The notes beneath the pieces were generated by a model. That model made no database searches. It was not told the DNA's origin and saw only the letters and a list, made by a program, of their open reading frames with translations. Made by a program: the position numbers and the translations under genes. Of a stretch of 64,000 nt of DNA, positions 12,604 through 51,200 are shown piece after piece (positions within the stretch are counted from its first letter, which is position 1; each line of letters starts with the position of its first letter). Origin of the DNA: Dimorphilus gyrociliatus (lineage: Eukaryota > Animalia > Annelida); the NCBI GenBank assembly GCA_904063045.1, contig CAJFCJ010000002.1, forward strand, positions 2,723,891 through 2,787,890, given 5' to 3'.

Positions 12604-15600
12604 ATGGCTGAGGTTCTCTACAGAAAAAATCCCATGTTTAAGCCTAAAGTAACTTTAAAATATACCATATATTATAAATTTCAATATTTTACATCTTATT
12701 ATTTTTTTTAGCAAGCCTGGAATGAGAAATCAAAGATATTTTCCTTTCCATTCCGACTGAACTCAAGGCTCCAGAAAGAGGATGATCATTATCAATATGA
12801 GACAAAATTTGGTCGATGTAAATCTGAAAGTAGTAAGTAAATTAATAAACAATTATAAATTGAAAATAGAAGTTTTTGATTTTCATTAAATTTTGCTTTC
12901 ATCTTTTAACTTTCTACTTTCAAAAATCAAATGAAAGAGAAGACAAGTTGGGATAAAACTTACGAATTTACCCAGGAAACGGCTTTTCACGGTGTGAAAT
13001 ATATAACAAGTGGACATAATATTTTCCGAAAGTATGTCTGATATTCTTATATCTCTGTTCAGAAGTGTTAATTCTAATCTATTCATATGTTTGTCTTGTT
13101 TGTCAACAAAAGGATATTTTGGGCGCTGTTCACATTTACTGCAGTTGCATTTTTCCTATATGTTCTTGGTCATAGGATAAAAACGTATAGAGCTTTTCCG
13201 AAAAGTGTAAACGTTGAAGTCGTTTACACAAATCGCCTCAGATTTCCAACTTTAACAATCTGCAATCAAAATTTCTTTAGGTATAAACATAGCAAACAAT
13301 TTAATAATACATAAAATAAACTTCTTCATCATTCATTCATTCTTTCTTTCAATCTTTCATAATGGAATTAAAGGACCACGAAGACTTTTGAAATGGGCTT
13401 ATTCGATAGAATTGAAGATGTTTTTGGAGGTTCTGAGGATTCAGGCATTTTATTAAAAGATTTTAATGAAGAAAGTTGCGAAGATAAGTTAATAAAAACA
13501 CCCAGAAAATACTTGAAAGGCTTCGAATCGTTATATAATAGTTTCAATGACGTCACTGAGAAAGTTTGTAAATCTTTGTGCCTTGATTTTGCGGATAAAA
13601 CTTGCAATTCTGTAACCTATAATTTAAAAACCAAAGTCTGTTATATAACACGAATAACGAAAGACACGGCTGGCTCCGTTTTAATCGACAGTAATGTGAC
13701 AAACTACTTTGAAAGAGAGAGATGCAATGGTAAGAACATTAGAATTTTGCTTTCATATTTTCAATAAAAAAGAAACGGTTGTTAAAGTATACTTTCGTTT
13801 TGAAAATAAGTCAGAAGGGGAGAAAGAGGTGTGCATAGAATGTTATATTCCATTACCAAAGGTTTACACAAGGTAGTATAAGAGATTCTGTGTTAATTTT
13901 TTATTATATATATATACAACTAATGATAAATAATAAATGAAAATATTCTGTGCATACATTTTTCAAACATTAAGTCTCGGGTTGATTAACAAAACTAAAA
14001 ACTACTATAATATATTAATTACAGGGGAAAAGAGTGCAGTATCTTGTAATTTTGATGATGATCAGGAGTTTTGTAAATTTTATCAAGATACCGATGACGA
14101 TTTTGACTGGGCAAGACATAAAGGGCAAACAGGAACTTTTAAAACGGGTCCAAGTGAAGATCATACAACGGGCAGAGGTTATTATATCTATGTTGAAGCA
14201 ACTAATAGAAAAGCTGGTCATTCAGCAAAGTTAATTTCTCCATTTCTACAAGCTCGAAAGAAAATTTGTATGGAATTTTATTACAAGTAAGATAAAGCTT
14301 TAGAATTTCTACTAACTAAATAGTTCGTTCTGTATTTCATTTAATTTTGCTTATGATCTTTCAAAAGCCTAATTTGATATGGTGAATAATTCACATCATG
14401 AATTACCTTTAGTTTTAAAAACATGAAATATAGTAAAATATTAAATACGGTCAGTTAAGCCATTAAGACAAAATGCATTCAATAGTTTAGAACAGCTAAC
14501 TTTTCCGCAAACACTTTATCCTTCTTTTCTTTATAAAATTTTTCGACTTTTAAGCGTCATCATCTGCTATTTATTCATATGTATTTCATTAATATTTTAG
14601 CATGTTTGGTGTTCAAGCTGGTCTATTAACGATTAAGCGGCGAGAAACCAATAAAGTGGAAAGTATTATTTGGTCTAGAACTGTTCCATCAGATACAACA
14701 GAATGGAGTAGAACTGTCGTTGAACTCCAACCTGGTCTTTTCCAAGTTGTTATTGAAGGCGTTATTGCGGATGGTCCTCTTGGTGATGTTGCTGTTGATG
14801 ACATTAGAATTGGAGATTGCAAAACAATACGTAAGCATATTTTTTATGCAATTGAGAAGATCTTATTTCAACATATCTTTAAATATTTAACTATGACGTT
14901 TTTCAGTTCCTGAATGTAAATACAACAAGTACGGTTCGGAGTTTCAGGGTTCTACATTTACATCAAGTAACACGAATAAATCATGCATCAAATGGACAGA
15001 AATGTTATCGGTTATAAATAAAACTGTGGTAAAAGAACGTTTCGAATTTCCAGGAACAAGTCTGGAAGAGGTTTTTATTCATCGTTCTTTTCATAAAAAC
15101 TTTCGATGTATATCTAAATCTTTCATTTTGAAGGCCGAAAACTATTGTCGAAATCCTAATCGAGATCCAAAAGGACCGTGGTGTTACGTTTCTACGGATG
15201 GTGAACGAGAGTATTGCGACATTCCCTTTTGCGGTACAAATTTATCATTAATCATTACTTTAACCAAATAGCATGATTCAAATTGAAACAATTCATCAAC
15301 AGCTTGTAAGAAAGATGATTTCTTATGCACAAACAATAATTGTATACCGAAGTACAAATTATGTAACGGCAAAGATGATTGTGGAGATAATTCCGATGAG
15401 GAAAAGACTTGCTGTACGAATATTTATTGCAAATTTAAACGACAATTTAAAATTCTTCTAATGTTTTGTAGCATCAAGCGCTAATTGCGATTTCGAGAAT
15501 ACTTTTGTATCTGGATATCGAAATAGAAACACTTCAACCAAAACCATTGAATGGAAAAGATTTAGAGGTTCTACGAAATCCAGTGGAAGTGGTTACAGCA

Positions 15601-18600
15601 ATTTAAGGTTTGATTACACTAAAAAATCCTCTCTGGGTCATTATATGTTGGTTGATTCGAGTGTGGCTGGACAACCAGTTGGCGAACTGGCACAGTTGCT
15701 TTCTCCAGTTATTAATGAAAATTCACAGCAAAATTGTTTAAGATTTTACTACTATATGTTCAATTTTCATGAAGATCCATCTAAAATGGGAAATCTAACA
15801 GTGAAGCTATACTTTAATGATTTAGACATTCGACCACTTTACCGTATTGTTGGCCGGCAACCAGATGGTTGGCAATCTGCTTGGGTTACAATTCCACAGA
15901 CAAATTTATCATACTCTCTTCTCTTCGAAGTAAAGATTGGAGAACAATTTACGTCCGATATTGCTATTGATGATATTAAATTAGATTTCGGGGAATCGTG
16001 TGAAGAATTGTTAAATATTCCTATTAAACCAGTGCCGCTCGATCCTGCAGAGTTTTTATGCAAATACGGAGATAAAATTAACAAAACGAAATTCTGTGAC
16101 GGAGTTGAGGATTGCCCAGACGGAAGTGATGAACTTCAAGACGAATGCATTCAGAGTGTGTAAACATAATTCTTGAATTATTTATATATATGTTTTGATA
16201 TTTTATAAAGGAAATAATGTATCCTGCATTTTTGACCATGATTATATGTGTGGATATAAAATTGAAGGTTTAAACCGAACTATGTGGCAAAAGAGCGAAT
16301 TAGTCATAGATGGCGGTAAGGTATCAGTTAGTGCCCATAGAGTTTAAAACATACAACCATTATCTGTTTTTAGTTAAGGAAAAGGTGATAGAGACTAGAC
16401 ATTTATTAAATTTTGGATTTGCGACTGAAGTAATTTCGCCAGTTTTTGAATTGAAGGAAAAAGGATGTTTGGAAATTAAAATTTATGTTAGATATTTGCG
16501 CAGTTTATTTTATAGATTTAGAGTTTACCAACAATATGAAAAATCGAGAAGACTATTATTAGAGTATGTTTGACAATAAGTTCAGCATTGAAACGTCTTA
16601 TGCATACCTATATGTAACTATGTTAATATATATTTTTTATATATTAGTTTGAATCCAGGAAACATGTTAGTAAAGAAATGGGATAAAGTATTAGTACCAG
16701 TACATCTGGGTAAAAGTAAAGTAGTGATTGTAAGACATTCACTTAATCCGTATCCATGGAAAGAATTTGGCGACTTTCTTGCTATAAAGGAAATACAACT
16801 CCATAATGAAAAATGTACAAGTGTTCGTAAGTATCTTATTGTTGACAAATGTTCAATATTTTATCATTTGTTAAGATATGGTCATTTTATAGATAAAAGT
16901 TGGGGAGGTTTCTCCAAAACATGTAAATTTAATTCTCCTGATCTTTGTGGATTTTCTCAAACTTATGATGATAATCATATTCGCTTCGCCTCAACCAAAT
17001 ATTATTTTGCGAGCGAAGGAATGGCTTCTCTAGCCCTAACAACCGATGTAACTGACATATTGAAACCTTATCGATTGATTTCACCCGAATTTAACATCAC
17101 AAAACCAAGTTGTTTTCAGTTCTGGTAAAAAAAAAAGTCAATTTTGTTTACTGTAAACTAAACCCCATTATAATTGAATCTTACAGGTTCCAATATAGTA
17201 CTATTCATTTAGATAAAAGCCAAGCCGCCAGGCAGTTTGCGGTTTATTGGGAGAGCAATGGAACAGAGGAAAAAATATGGAATATTAGTAAAAACGTACA
17301 ATTATACGGTACCAAATGGACAAAGGCAGAGTTGAAGGAAGGCTATGGTAGATTAATTTTTGAAGTTTTCGGAAAATTTCATTATAACTCAATAAATATT
17401 GTTAACTATACAATTACGGAAGGACACTGTCCACTGCCTGAAGGTACCTATATAATTACGTTAAAAATATCCTTTATCAATTTATTCATTAATTATATAG
17501 ACGTTTGCAAATCGACAAAGTACTGCTCGTCTGTTCCATATTGTATACAAAGCTATTTTTACTGTGATGGCATTCTAGACTGTCCAATGGAAGAAGATGA
17601 AAACAACTGTACTATTTGTGGGCATAGAAACACCAAATGGTGTCCAAAAAAAAAAGATGAGTTTTCAGGCTCAGGCTCATCGGGTGATAATGATCTCAAC
17701 TCTGGGTCAGGTTCAGGTTCAAACTCAGGTGGAAATGAAATACAGTCGGAATCAGGTTCAGGACTAGGATTAGGATTAGTATCAGGAGCAGGATCAGGAT
17801 CAGGATCAGGATCAGATTCAGGCTCAGGATCAGAACAGCGACTACAATTAAGATCAAAATCAGGATCAGAATCAGATTCTGAGCAGGATTCAAGCTCAAA
17901 TGAAAATGACTGGAAAAATCAAGACACATTTGACAATAATAATAAACTATCATTACCACAACTACCTGGTTTGTTCTTTACTGGAACTACAGGCTTAAAT
18001 GATAATCTTCAGGTAAATATATAAATTTTAAAAGTATCCATATAATCTAAGTAAATTATATTTAATGAAGTCCCAAAAACTCCTCTATTCTAATACATCC
18101 GATATTGAAATTGAAAGTTTAAAAATATGGGAAAAAATGAAAAATCAGACTATAGGAACAGTAGAATCAATAAGTATATTGCAATATTTTCAGTTCATTT
18201 ACAAACACACTTCCACTTAATTGTATCATTTGCATATTTAGCTGTAAACAATTTGAGAAGGTTTCATACAGATGCAGCACATGAAAAACAAAATCTCATA
18301 CATAAGTAAATCTATTTTCATTCTCTTAAATATCACTTATCAATAATTTCATCTACCATTTAAGATGTTCATGGGAAGGGGTTCCCTGCTCTCATTTAAA
18401 TTTTTCCTCTATTCTCACCGATTACGGTTATTGCCATACTTTCAACTGGAATGAAGACAACATACTAACAACAACAAAAACTGGTGAATTATCCAATACT
18501 TACACAAGCATTCTCCTTATCAAAAATAAATATTCATTAATTATTCAATATTTTTCATAGGTTCAAGTTCAGGATTGACTTTGATCTTAAATGTAGAAGA

Positions 18601-21038
18601 ATATGAATATATGAAAGGTCCGCAAAACGATGCTGGAGTTAAAATGTTTCTTCACAACGCAAATGAAGTTCCTTTCGTAAGAGATTTAGGTTTTGCAGCT
18701 GCTCCCGGTCTCCATTCACTCGTCTCTGTTCAGTATAGCGAGGTATTATCAAATATATGAAATCATATTTGTCTTGATTGAATACAAAACTCTATTCGCT
18801 ACAAATGTTTATAGAATGTTGGTTTACCGGATCCATGGGGCGTTTGTGGAACGAAACCATTAAAATATTTCCCAAAATATACTTATTCAGCTTGTGAGAG
18901 AGAATGTGAAACAGATGCAGTTGTGAAGCAATGCGGTTGCAGGAACTCTTTTATGCCACCGGAAGCTGATAGAAATCAAACGGTATATTGTACAACAGAC
19001 CAATATTTCAATTGCTTAGTTCATACAAGAGGTACTTTGGGATCGAATAAGAAAAACTGCAAATGCGTGGAGCCTTGTACAATAACGGGATATCAGTCTT
19101 CATTGTCTTATTCAGCAATATCATCTCTAAGTGTTGAAAAATTGTTGAGTATCAATACACAAACTCTGAAGAATAATTTTTATAAAGTAGAACATCTGAA
19201 ACAAAGAATTGCTGGTTCAAATTTTGTAAATGACTTGAAAATTTTAGAAAATGTTTTACATAGTTTTAATGCTCTGTACAAATATGCAAAAGTAAATACC
19301 TTATCGTATGAGAAGTCAATCTTCTATAAACTGAGAAGATGTATGGATAGGATGCTCTCAATCTATCGATCTGATATGGAACTGATATATCCTATTCTTA
19401 ATCAATATTACGATGCTTATGAAGAAGCTTATGGTACAAGTAGATTAGCCATGAAATCATCGTTTGAATCTATCCAAATTAAATCAGCTGCTGTTTTACA
19501 AAAAGCTCTAAACAGTTCAAAATACACTGATGTTAAGAATGATGAAATGATATCTTTAGTTGCCGAATATAATACCACAATTGATCTAATTGACCGCTTT
19601 CAGATTTATGTTGAAGAAAGAAAGTCTCCCTTTATTTTAAACGTAACGACAACTGATAAATTACCTCCAAAACAATATATCACTGAAAGTAGAGCTGAAC
19701 AGTGCGATGAATACAAAAAGAAAAATATTTTTCTAATAAATAGCATAATTCGTACCTTATCCCTTCTAGACGCAAAACAATTGAAATGGGAATTTAAAAG
19801 GGACTACTCCAGCCTTTCCAAAAACGGTAAAGAGTATATGGGCTGTTTAGAAGAATATTATTCAATTGTTAAACACTTTGGAGAATGGCAAGAAGAAAAA
19901 GAAAAAAGTATTAAAGCTTTACTGAGAGATGAAGGATTATTCCCGGAAATTCAAAATTTTGACTTTGAAGCAGAATGGGAAGAAATTGATTACGTGAAAG
20001 AAAAAGTACTTGATTTCATGGAAGAATATATGAAACATTCAACGAATAAACTCGATAACAAACACAATCTAGATTCTTCGATAATAAATCAAGCAATCAG
20101 CAATATTAATTCATTTATTCGTAAAATTCAAACTCGTCTTGTTGATACAATGAGAAACAAAGTTTCTGTGACTTCCCGTTCTATAAAAAGTGGCTATTCG
20201 GATGCTATCGAAAGAATCGAACGAATTTTTCCATATCAGAGTGAAAAGGGACGTGAAATTTTATCATCAATTTCGCAAAATCTGTCGATATGGTGGAGAC
20301 CGCGAGCAAACGTAGAAGAGCCATCGACGCCGTATCGAGGAGATCTCTATTTAAGTGTACATTACACTTTTGCATAGATAAGACAAGAATGAACATTCAT
20401 TTTTTGCAGATTCCAAGCAACTTGACGACGTTTCGCGAGAAATTGCTTGAAATTAATTTACAGGAAATCCTAGATGAATACTTTGCTCCTGTAAGAAGTT
20501 CTTTGGCTCATTTTGAAAACTTTATGTCTGATTTGGAAGCGAATTTAATTAAGCCATTACAACAATTATCAACTAGTATTAATGATTATATCATAAAAAC
20601 GAAGATAAATGAAAAGTTTGTTCTGTAAGTTGTTTAATGAATTGTATTCTCTTTTCTTTTTTATAGACGATTTTTCGATTTTACTGTCATATTAATAGAA
20701 CTAATTAAGAACTTTGTATGATTAAATTAGGGACAACTTTATTACTGTCGACGTCTTTTTTGCACAACTGAAATATCAAAAGATTGAACAACAAGTTGCG
20801 TATGATATAAGTAACTTCTTTAGTAAGTAGTTTTTATTAGGCTTTTATTATTTGCATAACATTTAATTTAACCTTTTATCAATGAATTATAGGCGAAGTG
20901 GGTGGTTTTCTTGGTCTTTTTCTTGGTGGGAGCGTTTTGAGTCTATTGGAATTATTTGATTTTATGCTTAACCTTCTAACCAGAAGATTGCATTTGAAAT
21001 CGTCGAAAGTTTCAGATTCTACTATCACGCTAAAATAA
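12604..21038 (+). CDS. Giant DEG/ENaC (amiloride-sensitive channel family) subunit, copy A, with PAN, 4 MAM, kringle and 3 LDLa modules; 25 coding exons, ~2,090 aa
   Basis: Exons 12604-12648, 12712-12832, 12938-13031, 13113-13280, 13374-13729, 14025-14286, 14601-14830, 14907-15070, 15134-15233, 15303-15413, 15472-16155, 16211-16315, 16374-16563, 16648-16826, 16893-17124, 17187-17443, 17501-18012, 18071-18173, 18242-18305, 18365-18483, 18561-18742, 18815-20356, 20410-20624, 20731-20822, 20893-21038 join in frame (6273 nt). Family motifs: pre-TM1 [13 protein letters not shown]; TM1 [18 protein letters not shown]; [13 protein letters not shown]; AAH; [20 protein letters not shown]; [13 protein letters not shown]; thumb Cys cluster; [24 protein letters not shown]; TM2 [20 protein letters not shown]. 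The acceptor at 12938 is weak; ATG 12931 is an alternative start. Confidence 0.9.
13374..18012 (+). other. Extracellular module array in copy A finger region: PAN/Apple, MAM, kringle, LDLa, MAM, LDLa, MAM (degenerate), MAM (degenerate), LDLa, Ser-Gly/acidic spacer (~1,130 aa)
   Basis: PAN: C..VCKSLC...[15 protein letters not shown]: [47 protein letters not shown]. Kringle with 6 Cys and NYCRNP..PWCY..YCDIPFC. LDLa: [33 protein letters not shown]. Confidence 0.88.
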
Positions 21039-22241: not shown

Positions 22242-25200
22242 ATGGCCGATAGCAGTTTCAACAACGATTCCTTCTTTAAGCCAAAAGTAACATGGATTAA
22301 CTTGTTTTATATTACATATTGAAACTTTTTAATAAATAGTTTTATATTCGATTCTTATTCTTTCTTTCTTTATTTTCTACATTAATTCTACGTTTTGACT
22401 CTTTCTTTTAGAAGGCTTGAAAGGAAAAGACAAATATATTTTCTGCCCTTTTTCGACAGAGTACAATGGAACGTAAGAGGAGGCATACACAATGCTATGA
22501 AAGTAATAATACAGATTTTGATGGATGTAAATCTGAAAGTAGTAAGTAAATTAATAAACAATTATAAATTGAAAATAGAAGTTTTTGATTTTCATTAAAT
22601 TTTGCTTTCATCTTTTAACTTTCTACTTTCAAAAATCAAATGAAAGAGAAGACAAGTTGGGATAAAACTTACGAATTTACCCAGGAAACGGCTTTTCACG
22701 GTGTGAAATATATAACAAGTGGACATAATATTTTCCGAAAGTATGTCTGATATTCTTATATCTCTGTTCAGAAGTGTTAATTCTAATCTATTCATATGTT
22801 TGTCTTGTTTGTCAACAAAAGGATATTTTGGGCGCTGTTCACATTTACTGCAGTTGCATTTTTCCTATATGTTCTTGGTCATAGGATAAAAACGTATAGA
22901 GCTTTTCCGAAAAGTGTAAACGTTGAAGTCGTTTACACAAATCGCCTCAGATTTCCAACTTTAACAATCTGCAATCAAAATTTCTTTAGGTATAAACATA
23001 GCAAACAATTTAATAATACATAAAATAAACTTCTTCATCATTCATTCATTCTTTCTTTCAATCTTTCATAATGGAATTAAAGGACCACGAAGACTTTTGA
23101 AATGGGCTTATACGATAGGGTTGAGGATGTTTTTGGAGGTGTTGATAATACTGAATCTTCGAATGAAGAAGAAGGTAAGTAATAAAAATGATATATTCAC
23201 TTAAATAAAACATTTTACATATTTCTTATATTCAAAAAGAATGTCGGGATAATCTAATAAGACGGCCCCAAAAGTATCTAAAAGGCTTTGAATCCTTGTA
23301 TTTCTCTTTCAATGACGTCACTGAAAAAGTTTGCAAATCCTTGTGCTTGATATTTGCTGACAAGACTTGTAATGCGGTCACTTACAACTTAAAAACCAAG
23401 TCCTGTTACATAACGCCAATAACGAAAGATACAACTGGAGCACAATTAATTCATAGCAACGTGACAAATTATTATGAAAGAGAGAGATGTAATGGTAAGA
23501 CACATATTTCTATTTATCTCTTAGTCGACCTGTTTCTAAAAAATTAACTCATTGTTTGAGGAATAATTGTTTTAAAATAGACGCATGCAGAGACTATTAG
23601 ACTCTTAGAAGGAATCGTATAAATAAGTCAGAATATCTGAATGAATAATTAGTAGTCTACTGTTTCATTAGAAAACTTCTTAACAGTGATACTATCAGCT
23701 ATTCTATAATTTCTTAATTTCACCAACTTTAGGAGACAAACAACTAGTACAATGTGATTTTGATGAAGAGAGCAACAGCTTCTGTGAATTTTATCAAGAT
23801 GACAAAGATAATTTTGATTGGGCTAGACAAAAAGGAGAAACTGGTACATTTCACACTGGTCCTACTAAAGATCATACAACGGGCAGAGGTTATTATATCT
23901 ATGTTGAAGCAACTAATAGAAAAGCTGGTCAATCGGCAAAGTTAATTTCTCCATTTCTACAAGCTCGAAAGAAAATTTGTATGGAATTTTATTACAAGTA
24001 AGATTCAGTTATAACTTTTCTAAAAGAATATTACGAAATTGAAACTTTGTGTAGTATATATATTGTTACCATAAGTACATTCATATATAAATGAATAACT
24101 GATGACGATAAATATATTTATAGTCATTTCAAAAACACATTTTAACTAAATCTCTCTGAAATGAATATATAATATAAAATATTAAACATATTCCCTTATT
24201 GGTAATAAATATTGTTTAAAACCTTTTTCTCTATCTTAAATATTAATAAAAACTTTTGCAGTTTATTTTAATTTTCCTTTGCATGCTTCTGCTATTTATT
24301 CATATGTATTTCATTAATATTTTAGCATGTTTGGTGTTCAAGCTGGTCTATTAACGATTAAGCGGCGAGAAACCAATGAAATGGAAAGTATTATTTGGTC
24401 TAGAACTGTTCCATCAGATACAACAGAATGGAGTAGAACTGTCGTTGAACTCCAACCTGGTCTTTTCCAAGTTGTTATTGAAGGCGTTATTGCGGATGGT
24501 CCTCTTGGTGATGTTGCTGTTGATGACATTAGAATTGGAGATTGCAAAACAATACGTAAGCATATTTTTTATGCAATTGAGAAGATCTTATTTCAACATA
24601 TCTTTAAATATTTAACTATGACGTTTTTCAGTTCCTGAATGTAAATACAACAAGTATGGTTCGGAGTTTCAGGGTTCTACATTTACGTCAAGTAACACGA
24701 ATAAATCATGCACCAAATGGACAGAAATGTTATCGGTTATAAATAAAACTGTGGTAAAAGAACGTTTCGAATTTCCAGGAACAAGTCTGGAAGAGGTTTT
24801 TATTCATCGTTCTTTTCATAAAAACTTTCGATGTATATCTAAATCTTTCATTTTGAAGGCCGAAAACTATTGTCGAAATCCTAATCGAGATCCAAAAGGA
24901 CCGTGGTGTTACGTTTCTACGGATGGTGAACGAGAGTATTGCGACATTCCCTTTTGCGGTACAAATTTATCATTAATCATTACTTTAACCAAATAGCATG
25001 ATTCAAATTGAAACAATTCATCAACAGCTTGTAAGAAAGATGATTTCTTATGCACAAACAATAATTGTATACCGAAGTACAAATTATGTAACGGCAAAGA
25101 TGATTGTGGAGATAATTCCGATGAGGAAAAGACTTGCTGTACGAATATTTATTGCAAATTTAAACGACAATTTAAAATTCTTCTAATGTTTTGTAGCATC

Positions 25201-28200
25201 AAGCGCTAATTGCGATTTCGAGAATACTTTTGTATCTGGATATCGAAATAGAAACACTTCAACCAAAACCATTGAATGGAAAAGATTTAGAGGTTCTACG
25301 AAATCCAGTGGAAGTGGTTACAGCAATTTAAGGTTTGATTACACTAAAAAATCCTCTCTGGGTCATTATATGTTGGTTGATTCGAGTGTGGCTGGACAAC
25401 CAGTTGGCGAACTGGCACAGTTGCTTTCTCCAGTTATTAATGAAAATTCACAGCAAAATTGTTTAAGATTTTACTACTATATGTTCAATTTTCATGAAGA
25501 TCCATCTAAAATGGGAAATCTAACAGTGAAGCTATACTTTAATGATTTAGACATTCGACCACTTTACCGTATTGTTGGCCGGCAACCAGATGGTTGGCAA
25601 TCTGCTTGGGTTACAATTCCACAGACAAATTTATCATACTCTCTTCTCTTCGAAGTAAAGATTGGAGAACAATTTACGTCCGATATTGCTATTGATGATA
25701 TTAAATTAGATTTCGGGGAATCGTGTGAAGAATTGTTAGATATTCCTATTAAACCAGTGCCGCTCGATCCTACAGAGTTTTTATGCAAATACGGAGATAA
25801 AATTAACAAAACGAAATTCTGTGACGGAGTTGAGGATTGCCCAGACGGAAGTGATGAACTTCAAGACGAATGCATTCAAAGTGTGTAAACATAATTCTTG
25901 AATTATTTATATATATGTTTTGATATTTTAAAAAGGAAATAATGTATCCTGCATTTTTGACCATGATTATATGTGTGGATATAAAATTGAAGGTTTGAAA
26001 TATTCTAAATGGCATAAAACTTCCGTAATCGTTGACAAGAGTGAGTTTAAAAGTACTGAGTTTCATTTACACTTTTCTAAAAGTATTTTAATCCTCTCTC
26101 AGCTAAATATACTGCATTAAAAGGGGATAAGTTACTAAACGCTGGTTTCAACTCTGAAATTATTTCTCCAGTAGTTAATTTTTTCGAAAAAGGATGCATT
26201 GAAGTTGTACTGTATGTATTAAATTATTATGACGTTGGCAATCGATTTCAAGTTATTCAAAAATTTGAAACTTCTGAAAAGTTACTTTATGAGTAGGATA
26301 TTCTTAAAACTAATTATTTAATAATGTTTATTAAGTTATTCTGAAATATAGCGCCAAACCAGTGCTTTTATTATCGCAAACTTGGCGAAATTTATTAGTT
26401 CAAGTTTATCCTGGTAAGAGTCAGATCATTGTCAGAAGATTGTCAAAACTTAGTAATAGGTGGGGATGGCAATACAATTATTTGGCTATAAAGGAAATAA
26501 AATATCATAACAATTTGTGCAATGTTGTCAGTAAGTATCATATCTTTCGAATTTATTTTGTCGATTGACAGAAACAAACTTCAAAACAATTATTTATTAG
26601 AAAAAAGTTGGGGAGGTTTTTCTAAGTCATGTGAATTTGATTCTTCCGCTCTTTGTGGATTTGATCAAGATTATACTACTATTCACAGTCGTTTTTCCTA
26701 TTTAAAACCTACCTTTGTAACTGAATCAAAAGCCACTCTTCTTCTTCAGTCCGATATATACCGACTAAAGGATCCTTTTCGATTGACATCACCAGAGTTT
26801 AATGTGACAACAGCGAGCTGTTTACAATTCTGGTAAACTTAAATATGATGATATACAAATTGGAAATGAGGAAAATTTAATTTTTATAGGTTTAATTTTA
26901 ATTCAATCAACACTTATAAGTATGAGTCTGCAACATATCTTAATGTCTATTGGAAAGCTAATGGAACAGAGCAAAGACTTTGGCAAATTACTGGTAAAAT
27001 AGCCACACAGAGTTCTCAATGGACTGAAACAGAAATACCAATTGGTTTTGGCAGTATAATTTTTGAAGCACATGGTGTTTTTAACTCATATGCTCTATCT
27101 ATAAATCGATATAATATATCAGAAGGAAACTGTCCCAATCCCGAAGGTTAATCACATTTCTTTATAAAGAATAGTAACTAAAATATAATTCTTTTACAGA
27201 TGTCTGTAAAACAAAAACGTATTGCGTATCTGTACCGTACTGTGTACCCAATTATTTAGTTTGTGATGGTAAACAAGATTGCCCGGGTGGAGAAGAAGAA
27301 AAAAATTGTACACTTTGTTCTACAAACAATGATAAAAATTGCATTGAGAATAGTGGAGACAAAAAAGACGAAGACAACAATGAGGATGACAAAAATTCCG
27401 GTTCAGGAGAATCTGGTTTTGAAGAGTCAGGTTCAGGAGATGAAGAGTCAGGAGATGAAGACTGGAAAAACAAACAAAACGAAGACACTGCCGAAGAAAA
27501 GATTCTTGGAAAAAAAGTACATTATGGATTGTTCTTTACTGGAACTACAGGCTTAAATGATAGTATTCAGGTTAATAATTATTTTTTTAAATTATCCTTA
27601 TATTCTAAAAAAATTCTTTTAATCAAGTTCGCACTGAATATCCCTTATAATACATCCGATATTGAAATTGAAAGTTTAAAAATATGGGAAAAAATGAAAA
27701 ATCAGACTATAGGAACAGTAGAATCAATAAGTATATTGCAATATTTTCAGTTCATTTACAAACACACTTCCACTTAATTGTATCATTTGTCTATTTAGCT
27801 GTAAACAATTTGAGAAGGTTTCATACAGATGCAGCACATGAAAAACAAAATCTCATACATAAGTAAATCTATTTTCATTCTCTTAAACATCACTTATCAA
27901 TAATTTCATCTACCATTTAAGATGTTCATGGGAAGGGGTTCCCTGCTCTCATTTAAATTTTTCCTCTATTCTCACCGATTACGGTTATTGCCATACTTTC
28001 AACTGGAATGAAGACAACATACTAACAACAACAAAAACTGGTGAATTATCCAATACTTACAAAAACATTCACCTTATCAAAAATAAATATTCATTAATTA
28101 TTCAATATTTTTCATAGGTTCAAGTTCAGGATTGACTTTGATCTTAAATGTAGAAGAATATGAATATATGAAAGGTCCGCAAAACGATGCTGGAGTTAAA

Positions 28201-30595
28201 ATGTTTCTTCACAACGCAAATGAAGTTCCTTTCGTAAGAGATTTAGGTTTTGCAGCTGCTCCCGGTCTCCATTCACTCGTCTCTGTTCAGTATAGCGAGG
28301 TATTATCAAATATATGAAATCATATTTGTCTTGATTGAATACAAAACTCTATTCGCTACAAATGTTTATAGAATGTTGGTTTACCGGATCCATGGGGCGT
28401 TTGTGGAACGAAACCATTAAAATATTTCCCAAAATATACTTATTCAGCTTGTGAGAGAGAATGTGAAACAGATGCAGTTGTGAAGCAATGCGGTTGCAGG
28501 AACTCTTTTATGCCACCGGAAGCTGATAGAAATCAAACGGTATATTGTACAACAGACCAATATTTCAATTGCTTAGTTCATATGAGAGGTACTTTGGGAT
28601 CGAATAAGAAAAGTTGCAAATGCGTGGAGCCTTGTACAATAACGGGATATCAGTCTTCATTGTCTTATTCAGCAATATCATCTCTAAGTGTTGAAAAATT
28701 GTTGAGTATCAATACACAAACTCTGAAGAATAATTTTTATAAAGTAGAACATCTGAAACAAAGAATTGCTGGTTCAAATTTTGTAAATGACTTGAAAATT
28801 TTAGAAAATGTTTTACATAGTTTTAATGCTCTGTACAAATATGCAAAAGTAAATACCTTATCGTATGAGAAGTCAATCTTCTATAAACTGAGAAGATGTA
28901 TGGATAGGATGCTCTCAATCTATCAATCTGATATGGAACTGATATATCCTATTCTTAATCAATATTACGATGCTTATGAAGAAGCTTATGGTACAAGTAG
29001 ATTAGCCATGAAATCATCGTTTGAATCTATCCAAATTAAATCAGCTGCTGTTTTACAAAAAGCTCTAGACAGTACAGAAAGCACTGATGTTAAGAATGAT
29101 GAAATGATCTCTTTAGTTGCCGAATATAATGCCACAATTGATCTAATTGACCGCTTTCAGAATTATGTTGAAGAAAGAAAGTCTCCCTTTATTTTAAACG
29201 TAACGACAACTGATAAATTACCTCCAAAACAATATATCACTGAAAGTAGAGCTGAACAGTGCGATGAATACAAAAAGAAAAATATTTTACTATTAAATAG
29301 CATAATTCGTACCTTATCCCTTCTAGATACAAAACAATTGAAATGGGAATTTAAAAGAGACTACTCCACCCTTTCCAAAAACGGTAGAAAGTATATGGGC
29401 TGTTTAGAAGAATATTATTCAATTGTTAAACACTTTGGAGAATGGCAAGAAGAAAAAGAAAAAAGTATTAAAGCTTTACTGAGAGATGAAGGATTATTCC
29501 CGGAAATTCAAAATTTTGACTTTGAAGCAGAATGGGAAGAAATTGATTACGTGAAAGAAAAAGTACTTGATTTCATGGAAGAATATATGAAACATTCAAC
29601 GAATAAACTCGATAACAAACACAATCTAGATTCTTCGATAATAAATCAAGCAATCAGCAATATTAATTCATTTATTCGTAAAATTCAAACTCGTCTTGTT
29701 GATACAATGAGAAACAAAGTTTCTGTGACTTCCCGTTCTATAAAAACTGGCTATTCGGATGCTATCGAAAGAATCGAACGAATTTTTCCATATCAGAGTG
29801 GAAAGGGACGTGAAATTTTATCATCAATTTCGCAAAATCTGTCGATATGGTGGAGACCGCGAGCAAACGTAGAAGAGCCATCAACGCCGTATCGAGGAGA
29901 TCTCTATTTAAGAGTAAATTACACTTTTGCATAGATAAGACAAGAATGAACATTCATTTTTTGCAGATTCCAAGCAACTTGACGACGTTTCGCGAGAAAT
30001 TGCTTGAAATTAATTTACAGGAAATCCTAGATGAATACTTTGCTCCTGTAAGAAGTTCTTTGGCTCATTTTGAAAACTTTATGTCTGATTTGGAAGCGAA
30101 TTTAATTAAGCCATTACAACAATTATCAACTAGTATTAATGATTATATCATAAAAACGAAGATAAATGAAAAGTTTGTTCTGTAAGTTGTTTAATGAATT
30201 GTATTCTCTTTTCTTTTTTATAGACGATTTTTCGATTTTACTGTCATATTAATAGAACTAATTAAGAACTTTGTATGATTAAATTAGGGACAACTTTATT
30301 ACTGTCGACGTCTTTTTTGCACAACTGAAATATCAAAAGATTGAACAACAAGTTGCGTATGATATAAGTAACTTCTTTAGTAAGTAGTTTTTATTAGGCT
30401 TTTATTATTTGCATAACATTTAATTTAACCTTTTATCAATGAATTATAGGCGAAGTGGGTGGTTTTCTTGGTCTTTTTCTTGGTGGAAGCGTTTTGAGTC
30501 TATTGGAATTATTTGATTTTATGCTTAACCTTTTAACTAGAAAATTTGATATGAAATCATCTAAAGTGTCAGATTCTGTTATTTCTTTGAAATAG
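22242..30595 (+). CDS. Giant DEG/ENaC subunit, copy B (tandem paralog, same module architecture)
   Basis: Same exon series as copy A, with offsets 9709, 9725 and 9557 in shared tracts. First exon [15 protein letters not shown] (22242-22286) matches A's [15 protein letters not shown]. Extra intron 23175-23239. Diverged exons stay open with conserved Cys and splice phases. Ends [17 protein letters not shown]-stop. In-frame TGA at 22418-22420 if the first acceptor is used; downstream ATG at 22466. Confidence 0.85.
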
Positions 30596-48238: not shown

Positions 48239-51200
48239 ATGGCTTCAGTCACTAGTATGTCTAGTGCTCCGAGAAGTTTGCAAAATCTATTTGCACCAAA
48301 AACTACTGAAATGTGCCTTCGATGTAATGCGAGAGTGTATCAAGTGGAAAAAGTTGGACCAGTTAATGGGGTTGTCTTTCATAAGCAATGCTTCAGGTGT
48401 AAGCAATGTGGACTACCTTTGAGTATGAGGACTTACTTTACCGCTCCTTCTTTCTCAAAGGATATTAATAAAGAAATTTACTGCTCTAAACATAAACCGG
48501 AAGGGGAAGCGGTACGCTTAGATATTCACTCTTTGGGTCTAAAGCATGCCCTTTCCGCACCAAAGGCGGTTGATCCATACAATCTGAGACATCATTATGT
48601 ACCAGGGCAATTGGGGCCGAAAATTGATGGTGCTGCAATGTTTATTCGGTCAGCCATAGCTGGCCAAAATGCCCGAAAGGAGTATAAAGCCCCCACTAAT
48701 ATGGACAAACATCATTTCCCAGCTTTTGTGGTAAGAAAACAATCTTTCTATACATTTTTCTTCCTATTTTTTAATTGATAAAGTATTGCCTATATCCGAA
48801 AGTCTTTTTTTTAAAAAAGAAAAACCCGACTATTCTTCGCAAAAAGAAGATTTTTTTTATGTATCTCCGTTTTTTTTCACTTTCTTCTGTTTAAAATTCT
48901 TTTCAAACCTCTATTGTTTAGATGATATCAAAAATTGGCCGAGTCAATGGGAAACGTAAATAGCCTTACTTTTTTCACAAAGATATTGTGTTTGGTTGAA
49001 TTAAACACTGTCATATTCTTTTTTCTTCCAATACTAGTGGACGGTAATAAGTGTATAACGTTTTCCATTCGACTGGCAAATAAATAAACAAAATTTAAAA
49101 AAAAACACTTGAATTCTTCAAGACCACTTAATTTTTCTATCCTCTTTAATTATTGATAGAGTATCGTCAGTTGGAAGATTATTGACCGGAAGTTAATCAA
49201 TAAAAATAAGTTCATCGAAAGAATCACTTTTAAATGATTCCTTTTTGGTTTTTTTTTAAAATAGATGCATGCAGCTAAAGCTGAGGCTTTACGAAAAGCT
49301 CAGGAGCGTTTGGAGGAGGAATTTACTCTTGAAGAGGATGAACTGCATAAACAATTTATCGAAGAGAAAGTTGAACAAGATAAACAAATTGAAAATGAGG
49401 TTAAAGTTGAATGGGAGGAAAAATTAAAGACTCTTCAGGCGAAATTTGATTTGGATATAAGGGAGAGAAAAGATTCTGGCGACAAGGAAGTCATGACACA
49501 AAAATTCTATAAAGAAAAGGAAAGATTAGAAGAGCATATGACGCTAAAGAGACAAAAGAAGAAAGCAACAATGACCCTCAGATTACAAGAAAAATCACAA
49601 GCAGAAACTTCAAAGATGATTGCCGTTCAAAGTGAGAAATTATTACAGTTACACAAAGAACAAATGCAACAAACGAAAGAGGAAATTGTTGTTGAGTTGG
49701 TTAGTATACATTTTCTAATATTTTTATTACTTTGTTATTTTATTGGCTTCAGTAGAAATTTGATAATAGATTATGTATTATAATAGACTACGAACAAAGA
49801 ACATATTATGTAGGTGTATAGAAAAGAGGGGTGGAAGACCAAGCAGTGGTTCATGCGTGCCCGAATGCACCTCGAAAAAGCATTCAATCCTTTGTAAATA
49901 TTCGATACGTTTTCGCTATTTATCTAGGCCTATAAAAACGAATAGCTGAATTATCGTTAGAACGTGATTCGGTTGGCTTTTACTTATTTAACCCTTTCTT
50001 TCGATCGTTCCCCTCCCCTTCCTCTGAGTAACATATCTCCATTTGCACAATGTCTACAACCTCCTGTGGTATTTAAGATTTTGAGCCCATTCAAGTTCTA
50101 CACACCTTAACATATTTTTATGACCCTTAGACAATATCTTCACCTAATAAAAGAGACTAGAATAAATTGTTGAATATTCTTGTCTTGTCGTAAAGGCGCA
50201 ATACGAGTTATATGATGACTTTTCCCATTCCAAATCTTTCAATACGTATCCTATATCAGTAGTCGTGTAGTGCAGTAAAAAGGGAAAAATTGTCAAAATA
50301 TAAATGGATTTGTCTTATCTTTATACGAAGGCCATTCCTCTTATCCTATATCAATGTATACTTGCATATCTCTCACACACTCAGTAATCCCGTTAATACC
50401 CATGCTCACGTAAAAGGATAAGGGATAGGAGATGTACGGGGTAAAAATAATGGTGAGACTATTGCAGCCTGTTTAAACATAGGCCTACTAATCCCAAAGG
50501 TCTATTGATTATAATTTAGCTAGCAAATTGTTCATTTTTTTCCATTTTACGGTCCGTTATTTTCTTTTTAGAGGGAAAAAAAAAAGCTAATTTTTTTTAA
50601 AAAAAAATCAATGCTAAAAACTGAAAAAAAGAAAAAAAACATGAAAAAAAACACGGAAAAGTTGAGAAAATAAACAAATAGAAATAAAAAATCTTCATAC
50701 CTATTTAATTGCATAAAAGACGAGTTATTGCTTATATATTTTGTATGTTTGTTAATAGTTAGAAAAGTGAAAAAGGTTTTACTATTTTAATTGCCGCTCT
50801 TTAAATTCTTTAGCTTTTTTTTTTTTAGCTTGTCAAGTAGGCAAATATTCAGTTCATCCGTTATTTATTGCCGCAAGGTCACACTCAGCCAAAGAAGCGT
50901 TACAGTTTTTGCACAATTATTAATAATAGATGAATCAATTAAATAATATTTTTGAGTTTGTTGACAAAATTATTTTATTTTTCGAGAATGATAAACAATG
51001 GTAAACGCCATCTACAGGTTGAAGCCAAAGAACGTATGGAAGCTGATGGCGAGGAGGCGAATGTGGAAGCGGTTAAAGAGGCTATTGATGCCGTAAAAGC
51101 TATGGCAGTTGATTTACCTGGACCTCATCCGCCCTCTTGCCGAAAGCGTGATTTGTACTTAGATGCATCCGAATTTGAACAATTGGATCAGCACGTTTTC

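What the first reader, a model, noticed from the sequence alone, without database searches (positions are those of the whole stretch)
12604..21038. Giant receptor-like DEG/ENaC channel with a built-in PAN-MAM-kringle-LDLa array
Seen: every junction splices in frame into one ~2,090-aa protein. All DEG/ENaC hallmarks are present, but ~1,130 aa of extracellular modules (PAN, MAM, kringle, LDLa, MAM, LDLa, MAM, MAM, LDLa, SG spacer) sit between [13 protein letters not shown] and the AAH..CSW motif, i.e. in the finger domain. Known: typical DEG/ENaC subunits are about 500-700 aa. The finger is the variable gating region (protease-released inhibitory tracts in ENaC, peptide site in FaNaC). MEC-4/MEC-10 depend on separate extracellular matrix proteins, and LDLa-containing auxiliary subunits of other channels are separate proteins. 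Inference: a channel fused to its own sensor or tether, gated by protein ligand, protease or matrix tension. I know no characterised channel with this architecture, but I cannot search to confirm novelty.
Basis: partly seen in the sequence, partly recalled or inferred. Interest (0 to 1): 0.93.

Follow-up and report, generated by a model that had tools for sequence, protein, structure and literature searches.

The report
Giant sodium channel with built-in adhesion array
A small marine worm makes a sodium-channel protein four times the usual size. A long chain of protein-binding modules sits inside the part of the channel that normally controls opening, so the channel may carry its own tether or ligand sensor, but no function has been tested.

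Summary
Window 12931-21038 (+) encodes one 23-exon gene with 22 GT-AG introns (median 70 nt) and a 2,022-aa DEG/ENaC subunit with only two membrane helices. About 1,145 aa lie between finger helix alpha1 and alpha2: PAN, MAM, kringle, LDLa, MAM, LDLa, two weak MAM-like domains, LDLa and a Ser-Gly spacer. The closest plain relatives have 27-42 aa there. One exon (13374-13729) codes both conserved channel residues and PAN, so the array is not a nested gene. Spliced RNA contigs confirm 14 junctions, including the link from the array to the channel exons.

- **Paralog:** a tandem copy lies at 22640-30592.
- **Conservation:** the same ordered architecture occurs in two other unnamed animals (L001, L007) and in Intoshia linei OAF70867.1 (2,120 aa, uncharacterised).
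- **Second insert:** about 440 aa of long helices sit in the knuckle and are shared with 800-1,050-aa mollusc, nemertean and annelid channels.
- **Literature:** I found no paper on this. The nearest precedent is the C. elegans EGAS (EGF plus ASC) channels.
- **Mechanism:** gating by a tether or ligand is inference. ENaC-style furin cleavage finds no support.
- **Corrections:** the start is 12931, not 12604, and the length is 2,022 aa, not about 2,090.
- **Earlier notes:** the scan flagged similar giant channels at three other places in this genome. I did not check them.

The parts
12931..13031 (+). Coding exon 1: start Met and cytoplasmic N-terminus with the His-Gly motif (..AFHGVKYI..)
   Evidence: Translation. 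It aligns to the N-termini of plain relatives and to L001 and L007. The same start is present in the paralog at 22640.
13113..13280 (+). Exon 2: TM1 and the first palm strand ([13 protein letters not shown])
   Evidence: Pfam ASC E 6.5e-11, profile positions 23-77. Hydrophobic helix. GT-AG borders checked.
13374..13729 (+). Exon 3: channel finger alpha1-equivalent ([17 protein letters not shown]) followed in the same exon by the PAN/apple domain
   Evidence: Pfam PAN_1 E 6.9e-8. The first 20 aa align to plain relatives P0115 and P0029 and are conserved in L001 upstream of the alternative acceptor. RNA contig X1 record 1 covers 13373-13728.
14025..14830 (+). MAM1 in two exons (14025-14286, 14601-14830)
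   Evidence: Pfam MAM E 7e-22 (profile 1-80) and E 3e-10 (profile 78-158). RNA contigs cover both exons.
14907..15233 (+). Kringle in two exons (14907-15070, 15134-15233)
   Evidence: Pfam Kringle E 1.1e-11. Junctions 14830>14907 and about 15070>15134 appear in X1, X3 and X4.
15303..15413 (+). LDLa1, a single phase 1-1 exon
   Evidence: Pfam Ldl_recept_a E 1.2e-11. Junctions on both sides are seen in RNA.
15472..16155 (+). MAM2 plus LDLa2 in one exon
   Evidence: Pfam MAM E 6.1e-26 and Ldl_recept_a E 3.3e-6. RNA pieces cover 15472-16153.
16211..16826 (+). MAM3-like domain in three exons (16211-16315, 16374-16563, 16648-16826)
   Evidence: hhalign against MAM1/2 gives E 1.5e-3 over 137 columns. 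The L007 counterpart passes Pfam MAM at 31.9 bits. Exon lengths fit the first 443 letters of X1 record 3, and the X4 loose end matches 16808-16826. The paralog is 46% identical with no indels and dN/dS 0.36.
16893..17443 (+). MAM4-like domain in two exons (16893-17124, 17187-17443)
   Evidence: Pfam MAM E 0.049 on the first exon. hhalign against MAM1/2 gives E 1.5e-4. X1 record 3 covers both exons with no mismatches. dN/dS against the paralog is 0.31.
17501..18012 (+). LDLa3, then a Ser-Gly-rich acidic spacer (16 SG dipeptides in about 95 aa), then the return to the channel (..[15 protein letters not shown])
   Evidence: Pfam Ldl_recept_a E 1.8e-4, 22.1 bits. SG count. RNA piece covers 17499-18000.
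18071..18742 (+). Four channel exons (18071-18173, 18242-18305, 18365-18483, 18561-18742): finger alpha2-alpha3 equivalents (..[20 protein letters not shown]..), beta-ball and palm
   Evidence: Junctions 18173>18242, 18305>18365, 18483>18561 and 18742>18815 are seen in X1, X3 and X4. The exons align to plain relatives from about aa 1256 on and to ASIC1 through P0029.
18815..20311 (+). Long exon: Cys-rich thumb, then the start of a helical insert of about 440 aa in the knuckle
   Evidence: Pfam ASC E 1.3e-19. ASIC2 alignment covers 284-389. AlphaFold2 model has pLDDT 80.6 and helices up to 65 residues. Only the thumb finds a fold match. Donor 20311 is in phase 0.
20410..20624 (+). End of the helical insert
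   Evidence: The in-frame acceptor at 20410 matches where L001 coding resumes. RNA over this junction was not examined.
20731..21038 (+). Last two exons (20731-20822, 20893-21038): final palm strand, TM2 with G-G-S at the filter position, short C-tail and stop
   Evidence: Translation. These exons align to TM2 regions of relatives. Hydrophobic helix.
22640..30592 (+). Tandem paralog with the same exon plan
   Evidence: tblastn hits. The blocks at 98-99% identity include introns, and the other blocks are old and diverged. Its spacer-to-channel junction is seen in RNA.

Best explanation
This is a real, transcribed, evolutionarily conserved subunit of a DEG/ENaC (ASIC-like) cation channel. Its short loop between finger helices alpha1 and alpha2 has been replaced by about 1,145 aa of extracellular binding modules: PAN, MAM, kringle, LDLa, MAM, LDLa, two MAM-like domains, LDLa, and in this species a Ser-Gly acidic spacer. 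Its knuckle also carries a long-helix domain of about 440 aa. A trimer would display three such arms on top of the channel.

Shown: one gene, one reading frame, expression, topology, insertion point and conservation.

Inferred: the arms bind an extracellular macromolecule (matrix, a neighbouring cell surface or a soluble protein). Because they hang from the finger, the region that tunes gating in ASIC, ENaC and FaNaC, binding or pulling there changes opening. On this reading the protein is a channel with a built-in tether or ligand sensor. The two tandem paralogs share a near-identical core but have old, diverged PAN/MAM1 and MAM3-MAM4-LDLa3 modules, which fits two channels with different partners. 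The confidence of 0.7 covers the architecture (about 0.95) together with a binding role for the arms. For the step that binding or tension gates the channel, I put about 0.35-0.4.
For: - One gene: all 22 introns are GT-AG, the frame stays open for 2,022 codons, and the median intron is 70 nt. The published median for the presumed species is 66 (PMC7854359).
- Physical fusion: exon 13374-13729 codes both channel-core residues that align to plain relatives and the PAN domain.
- RNA: spliced contigs in three runs chain the module exons to each other. For the paralog they also chain the spacer exon to the channel exons.
- Topology: the protein has only two TM helices and no signal peptide for the array, so TM1 is needed to put the disulfide-rich modules outside the cell.
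- Insertion point: plain relatives have 27-42 aa where this protein has about 1,145. Mapped through P0029 onto chicken ASIC1, that gap lies between alpha1 and alpha2 of the finger.
- Conservation: the same module order sits upstream of the channel exons in L001 (44-70% identity), in L007 and in Intoshia linei P0004, which has ASC, MAM, kringle and LDLa.
- Single clade: in a tree of the thumb and helical region, all array-bearing sequences fall on one side of a branch (88/87 support), apart from the plain mollusc and nemertean channels.
- Constraint: the diverged MAM3 and MAM4 modules have dS about 1.4 and dN/dS 0.31-0.36, with no indels or stops.
- Channel hallmarks are intact: the HG motif, FPxxTxCN, the Cys-rich thumb, GGS in TM2 and the final palm strand.
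Against: - No functional data exist, and no expression site is known.
- The junction 13280>13374 and gene 1's own junction 18012>18071 were not seen among the RNA rows shown. Contigs break where the two paralogs are identical.
- MAM3 and MAM4 do not reach Pfam's threshold in this gene.
- MAM, LDLa, PAN and kringle are generic binding modules, so they do not name a ligand.
- The array could serve localisation or assembly rather than gating.
- C. elegans EGAS channels, the only named precedent with extra modules, gave no currents in oocytes (PMC10424705), so they give no functional guide.
Confidence: 0.7

Rival explanations
1. The array is an anchoring, sorting or clustering device. It fixes the channel at a particular matrix, cuticle or cilium site, or mediates assembly. 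Gating would be by an ordinary DEG/ENaC stimulus such as protons, a neuropeptide or membrane stretch, acting on the core.
For: - The core keeps all ASIC-like hallmarks and aligns best to ASIC1 and ASIC2 among solved structures.
- The nearest look-alikes of the array are MAM/LDLa repeat proteins of the MALRD1 type, which are binding or scaffold proteins (low scores, a lead only).
- The Ser-Gly acidic spacer resembles glycosaminoglycan attachment sites (compared with general knowledge).
Against: - The array is inserted exactly in the finger rather than at a terminus or a neutral loop. That position is conserved in Intoshia linei and in two unnamed animals known only from assembly contigs, which suggests that position matters.
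- Anchoring alone would be equally served by a separate subunit, as with MEC-4 and its matrix partners (general knowledge).
Confidence: 0.3
2. ENaC-type proteolytic control: the array is an autoinhibitory plug in the finger that proteases excise to activate the channel.
For: - The insertion lies in the finger alpha1-alpha2 loop. By my recollection of the ENaC structures, this is about where ENaC carries its protease-sensitive inhibitory tracts. I did not test that placement here.
- Kringle and PAN modules are typical of protease-system proteins (general knowledge).
Against: - The whole protein has no R-x-[KR]-R site.
- The linkers before PAN and after LDLa3 show no dibasic site shared by gene 1, gene 2, L001 and Intoshia, by my reading of the sequences printed.
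- An excised plug would not need nine well-kept binding modules under purifying selection.
Confidence: 0.1
3. Gene-model artefact: a secreted MAM/LDLa protein gene nested in an intron of an ordinary channel gene, or module exons that are normally skipped.
For: - The 13280>13374 junction was not among the RNA rows shown.
- Skipping from exon 2 to exon 18365 would stay in frame, judging by the exon phases.
Against: - Exon 13374-13729 holds both channel-core and PAN sequence.
- The array has no start codon with a signal peptide.
- The spacer exon is spliced to channel exons in RNA.
- The arrangement recurs in four taxa, and Intoshia's annotated protein has it as one product.
Confidence: 0.04

Closest known systems
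Acid-sensing ion channels (ASIC1/ASIC2; solved structures such as 2qts, 6l6p)
   Same: - They are the best sequence matches among solved structures for the thumb (E 1e-13).
- The plain relative P0029 gives E 1e-48 over TM1 to thumb.
- They share the two-TM topology, the HG motif, the Cys-rich thumb, the G-x-S filter and the final palm strand.
   Different: - ASICs are about 500-530 aa.
- Here about 1,145 aa of modules sit between finger alpha1 and alpha2, and about 440 aa of helices sit in the knuckle.
- Proton gating has not been tested.
Uncharacterised lophotrochozoan DEG/ENaCs of 800-1,050 aa (Haliotis XP_046543042.1, Octopus XP_052822091.1, Lineus XP_064643335.1, Ostrea XP_048752187.2, Owenia CAH1793886.1)
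   Same: - They are the closest relatives of the core and share the long helical knuckle insert.
- The oyster K1PHY3 model matches the thumb plus helices.
   Different: - They have only 27-42 aa at the finger site and no PAN, MAM, kringle or LDLa by Pfam.
- They fall on the other side of the tree from the array-bearing clade.
Intoshia linei hypothetical protein A3Q56_01374 (OAF70867.1, 2,120 aa)
   Same: It has the same composite: TM1, PAN-like, MAM, kringle, LDLa, MAM, further MAM-like domains and LDLa, then the channel with the helical insert.
   Different: - Identity is only about 25-28%.
- It has no Ser-Gly spacer.
- It comes from a highly reduced parasite and is uncharacterised.
[quoted passage not shown]
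   Same: They are DEG/ENaC subunits that carry extra extracellular modules in the same polypeptide.
   Different: - Their modules are EGF, not PAN, MAM, kringle or LDLa.
- I did not examine where their modules sit.
- They gave no currents in oocytes, so their function is equally unknown.
MEC-4/MEC-10 touch channel with separate matrix partners, and the ENaC finger inhibitory tracts
   Same: Functional analogies, from general knowledge: an extracellular tether or matrix for a DEG/ENaC, and a regulatory insert in the finger.
   Different: - In the MEC system the matrix proteins are separate genes.
- In ENaC the insert is short and cut by furin, and no furin-type site exists here.
MAM and LDL-receptor class A repeat proteins (MALRD1-like)
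   Same: MAM and LDLa modules alternate. These are the nearest clusters by language-model features (scores about 0.7, a lead only).
   Different: They are not channels. They have no ASC domain and no kringle or PAN in this order.

Membership tests
DEG/ENaC (Pfam ASC, PF00858) | Two transmembrane helices flanking one large extracellular domain, with short cytoplasmic ends | tested here: met
   Only two hydrophobic helices exist, at aa 34-56 and about 1969-1992. Pfam ASC hits the TM1 exon and the thumb exon.
DEG/ENaC (Pfam ASC, PF00858) | N-terminal His-Gly motif and post-TM1 FPxxTxCN strand | tested here: met
   ..AFHGVKYI.. and [13 protein letters not shown] appear in the translation and align to relatives.
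DEG/ENaC (Pfam ASC, PF00858) | Cysteine-rich thumb | tested here: met
   phmmer aligns it to ASIC2 residues 284-389 with the cysteines matched, E 1.3e-13. Foldseek matches the thumb of ASIC structures.
DEG/ENaC (Pfam ASC, PF00858) | G/S-x-S selectivity filter and conserved Glu in TM2, preceded by the last palm strand | tested here: met
   ..[21 protein letters not shown].. follows ..[24 protein letters not shown]... These align to relatives' TM2 regions.
DEG/ENaC (Pfam ASC, PF00858) | Trimeric assembly and amiloride-sensitive cation conduction | not testable with these tools
   This needs expression and recording, or a structure.
ENaC-type protease-gated channels | Furin-type sites flanking an inhibitory tract in the finger | tested here: not met
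   A regex scan finds no R-x-[KR]-R anywhere in the protein. By my reading of the sequences printed, the flanking linkers of the orthologs share no dibasic site.
MAM domain (PF00629) | Match to the profile above the curated cut-off | tested here: met
   MAM1 scores 78.4 and 40.5 bits on its two halves, and MAM2 scores 91.6 bits.
MAM domain (PF00629), third and fourth copies | Match to the profile above the curated cut-off | tested here: inconclusive
   The best result is Pfam E 0.049 at 13.9 bits for one MAM4 exon. hhalign against MAM1/2 gives E 1.5e-3 and 1.5e-4. The L007 counterpart of MAM3 passes at 31.9 bits. The spliced domains could not be submitted as references.
Kringle (PF00051), PAN (PF00024), LDLa (PF00057) | Match to each profile above the curated cut-off | tested here: met
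   Kringle 45.3 bits, PAN 32.7 bits, LDLa1 45.1 bits and LDLa2 27.6 bits. LDLa3 scores 22.1 bits, just below the 24.1 cut-off.
EGAS-type channels (EGF plus ASC) | EGF modules in the same polypeptide as ASC | tested here: not met
   Pfam finds no EGF on any piece. The only similarity is that modules are fused to the channel.
Part-time proteoglycan (glycosaminoglycan attachment at Ser-Gly with acidic neighbours) | Clustered SG dipeptides flanked by acidic residues, and actual glycan attachment | tested here: inconclusive
   There are 16 SG dipeptides in about 95 aa, 12 with an acidic residue nearby. Gene 2 has a shorter acidic SG stretch. L001 and Intoshia lack it. Attachment itself cannot be tested here.

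The most novel reading that the evidence does not exclude
A single-polypeptide tethered channel. Each trimer carries three multi-module arms of about 1,150 aa attached to the gating finger, plus a helical crown on the knuckle. Pulling or binding by matrix, cuticle or a partner cell would open the pore directly. Paralog-specific PAN/MAM1 and MAM3-MAM4 modules would act as different 'addresses'. The design would be old, shared by Intoshia linei and at least two unnamed animals, and expanded into a small gene family.
Probability: 0.3. Interest if true: 0.85.

Novelty: new variant of a known kind. Interest (0 to 1): 0.74.

Why it matters
How DEG/ENaC channels are coupled to extracellular structures is a long-standing question. 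The tether idea for touch channels rests on separate matrix proteins that are hard to reconstitute. Here the presumed tether or ligand-binding array and the channel are one polypeptide, joined at the finger. The coupling could therefore be tested directly by deleting, swapping or pulling on defined modules in a single cDNA.

The two tandem paralogs offer a natural swap experiment, because they have the same core and different MAM modules. The family also shows that exon shuffling can insert a whole mosaic-protein array into the gating region of an ion channel and keep it for a long evolutionary time.

Tried and rejected
- My first gene model had two wrong junctions. The acceptor at 13410 was replaced by 13374 after the peptide upstream proved conserved in L001 and in plain relatives. 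The junction 20291>20378 lacked a GT donor and was replaced by 20311>20410.
It has no AG acceptor to join at 12931, and it lies outside the duplicated block.
- The word-based protein search with Intoshia P0004 returned only itself.
- The look-up of Owenia P0003 found no contig.
- Rfam found nothing in the window.
- Fold searches of the helical insert found no specific fold, only generic long-helix bundles at TM below 0.3.
- Read laying could not show the TM1-to-PAN junction or gene 1's own 18012>18071 junction. Contigs break where the paralogs are identical, and part of the output was not listed. Several odd 'joints' with 30-34-letter sides are best read as contig-graph overlaps or paralog chimeras.
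- Trans-splicing as a cause of the contig start at 13373 is rejected. The contig begins with genomic sequence, and the genome paper reports no spliced leader.
- The spliced full-length protein could not be sent to the database, structure or Pfam tools because it has no reference. Whole-protein searches and a trimer model were left out for that reason.

Full report
WHAT IS THERE

The region is AT-rich animal DNA with 25-39% GC. Translating the stop-free segments on the + strand between 12.6 and 21.0 kb gives a collinear series of pieces:
- an ASIC-like N-terminus and TM1;
- PAN, MAM, kringle, LDLa, MAM plus LDLa, two further Cys-containing domains, LDLa and a Ser-Gly stretch;
- the rest of an ASIC-like ectodomain, with a 520-codon open exon and TM2.

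Pfam confirms PAN, MAM (twice), kringle, LDLa (two clear, one borderline) and ASC on these pieces.

GENE MODEL

I built the exon model from splice signals, RNA and homologs. The final model has 23 coding exons from 12931 to 21038. All 22 introns are GT-AG, with a median of 70 nt, and the product is 2,022 aa with a single terminal stop.

Two junctions of my first model were wrong and were corrected.

No AG acceptor lets it join at 12931, and it lies outside the block that is duplicated in the paralog, which starts with the same Met.

The protein has only two hydrophobic helices, TM1 and TM2. Everything between them is extracellular, including 45 cysteines and 16 N-glycosylation sequons in the array.

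RNA EVIDENCE

Four public runs hold this sequence. Laid on 13001-19000, runs X1, X3 and X4 give spliced contigs and X2 gives unspliced ones. GT..AG joints were seen at these sites:
- 14830>14907
- about 15070>15134
- about 15233>15303
- 15413>15472
- 16155>16211
- 17124>17187
- 17443>17501
- 18173>18242
- 18305>18365
- 18483>18561
- 18742>18815

The first 443 letters of X1 record 3 equal exactly the summed exons 16242-16315, 16374-16563 and 16648-16826. A loose end of X4 matches 16808-16826.

The contig that runs from the spacer exon into the channel exons carries 20 letters that differ from gene 1. These letters are the paralog's sequence, coding FALNIPY. The array-to-channel junction is therefore shown directly for gene 2. 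For gene 1, RNA covers the array up to 18000.

The junction 13280>13374 was not among the rows shown.

WHY THE ARRAY AND THE CHANNEL ARE ONE PROTEIN

- Exon 13374-13729 begins with about 20 residues ([17 protein letters not shown]..) that align to the finger start of plain relatives without any array (P0115, P0029). These residues are conserved in another species upstream of the PAN domain. The same exon then runs straight into PAN.
- The array has no start codon with a signal peptide, so only TM1 can place it outside the cell.
- The module exons are bounded by phase-1 introns, the usual mark of shuffled extracellular modules.

WHERE THE ARRAY SITS

In the closest plain relatives, residues up to ..CNQN.FR..(Y/F)D.. 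and residues from about ..H....CxW.. onward align to gene 1, with only 27-42 aa between them. Gene 1 has about 1,145 aa there.

I mapped this through P0029 onto chicken ASIC1. The pre-array residues correspond to finger helix alpha1. The post-array residues (..[15 protein letters not shown].. to ..[13 protein letters not shown]..) correspond to alpha2-alpha3.

A second insert of about 440 aa follows the thumb at the knuckle. AlphaFold2 predicts long helices for it with pLDDT 80.6, and no specific fold match was found.

RELATIVES

An exhaustive HMMER search with the thumb-plus-helix exon found 365 proteins.

The only giant among the 150 listed that matches this architecture is Intoshia linei OAF70867.1 (2,120 aa), which has ASC, two MAM, kringle and LDLa in the same order. 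The only other long hit, a 1,460-aa Polypedilum protein, has ASC alone.

Two assembly contigs from other, unnamed animals carry the complete collinear gene:
- L001 (29% GC, 44-70% identity), running from the N-terminus and TM1 through PAN, MAM, kringle, LDLa, MAM plus LDLa, MAM3 and MAM4 to the channel. Its LDLa3 appears in the translated ORF.
- L006/L007 (43.5% GC), with the same order over about 20 kb.

A second paralog in that assembly (L008) also has a MAM-like end upstream of its channel exons.

Channels of 800-1,050 aa from Haliotis, Octopus, Ostrea, Lineus and Owenia share the helical knuckle insert but lack the finger array.

In a maximum-likelihood tree of this region, the plain mollusc and nemertean channels form one side (100/99 support). 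All array-bearing sequences fall together on the other side (88/87), along with 13 single-exon fragments whose upstream content I did not check. The root is at the midpoint only. This is compatible with a single origin of the array.

THE TANDEM PARALOG

Gene 2 (22640-30592) has the same exon plan, with identical exon lengths in the diverged part.

Three blocks are 98-99% identical to gene 1, introns included. PAN/MAM1 is 77-86% identical, and MAM3-MAM4-LDLa3-spacer is below 70%.

In MAM3 and MAM4, dS is about 1.4 and dN/dS is 0.31-0.36. In the homogenised blocks dS is about 0.01. So these particular modules are old, constrained and different between two otherwise near-identical channels.

MECHANISM

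Shown: an intact, expressed, conserved DEG/ENaC subunit with a binding-module array in the finger.

Inferred:
- MAM, LDLa, PAN and kringle are adhesion and ligand-binding modules, by general knowledge of these families.
- Three arms per trimer, hung from the finger, are well placed to transmit binding or tension to the gate.
- Paralog-specific modules suggest different partners.
- The Ser-Gly acidic spacer (16 SG in about 95 aa) resembles glycosaminoglycan attachment sites. It is absent in L001 and Intoshia, so it is a lineage-specific addition.

ENaC-like furin release finds no support, because no R-x-[KR]-R site exists. A purely anchoring role cannot be excluded.

KNOWN OR NEW

Full-text searches found no paper that describes a DEG/ENaC with these modules. 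I combined degenerin or ENaC with MAM domain, kringle and LDL receptor class A, and with Intoshia and gyrociliatus.

The genome paper of the presumed species only says that its ENaC repertoire is canonical.

The architecture does exist unremarked in public databases (Intoshia). I therefore rate it a new variant of a known kind. It is a real and unusually large departure, but not a new category.

ORGANISM

An earlier follow-up note of this scan names the genome as Dimorphilus gyrociliatus. The base composition and the 70-nt median intron fit the published 66 nt. I did not prove the identity independently.

Earlier notes also list similar giant channels at three other places in this genome, and the mosaic paralogs and the second insert in this window. 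I checked the last two here but not the other loci.

Noticed in passing
window 12802-21020 against 22511-30577: The two tandem genes are a mosaic. Blocks at 12802-13431, 14563-16274 and 17967-21020 are 98-99% identical with introns included (dS about 0.01). PAN/MAM1 is 77-86% identical. MAM3-MAM4-LDLa3-spacer is below 70% identical, with dS about 1.4 and dN/dS about 0.3. This fits gene conversion that spares the modules presumed to set binding specificity.
   Followed up: yes
window 19130-20624 (and 28690-30182 in the paralog): A second insert of about 440 aa lies in the knuckle. It is predicted as long helices (up to 65 residues, pLDDT 80.6) and has no specific fold match. It is shared with 800-1,050-aa uncharacterised channels of molluscs, a nemertean and Owenia, so it is older than the finger array.
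   Followed up: partly
window 13729-18012, exon borders: The modules are bounded by phase-1 introns: MAM1, kringle, LDLa1, MAM2 plus LDLa2, MAM3 and MAM4 each start and end in phase 1. This is the classical exon-shuffling signature.
   Followed up: partly
Protein P0003 / P0151 (Owenia fusiformis CAH1775107.1 / CAH1775106.1): These annotated models lack TM1. They begin with a weak Laminin_G_3-like piece (E 7e-6, below cut-off), followed by the channel from the finger onward. They branch next to the array-bearing clade. They may be truncated models of a channel with a different finger insert.
   Followed up: no
window 17590-17880: The Ser-Gly-rich acidic spacer has 16 SG dipeptides and resembles glycosaminoglycan attachment sites. 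The paralog has a shorter acidic SG stretch. L001 and Intoshia have none.
   Followed up: partly
window 15201-15400 and 18201-18400 in run X1: Very deep contigs (depth about 300 and about 3,000) touch only short stretches here and then run on as unlike sequence (loose ends at 15324 and 18219). They probably come from other highly expressed transcripts or repeats that share a short segment. I did not identify them.
   Followed up: no
runs X3 and X4: These runs are labelled 'DNA?' in the run list but give spliced contigs with GT..AG joints. They behave as RNA.
   Followed up: partly
window 48239-48775 and 50952-53033 (+): There are long open exons with a LIM domain (E 1e-9) and three KY-like Ig-like domains (E 5e-62). 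They belong to neighbouring genes unrelated to the channel.
   Followed up: no
L008 (same ENA assembly as L006/L007, another contig): This is a second paralog of the giant channel in that unnamed animal, with a MAM-like end upstream of its channel exons. The family is multi-copy there too.
   Followed up: partly
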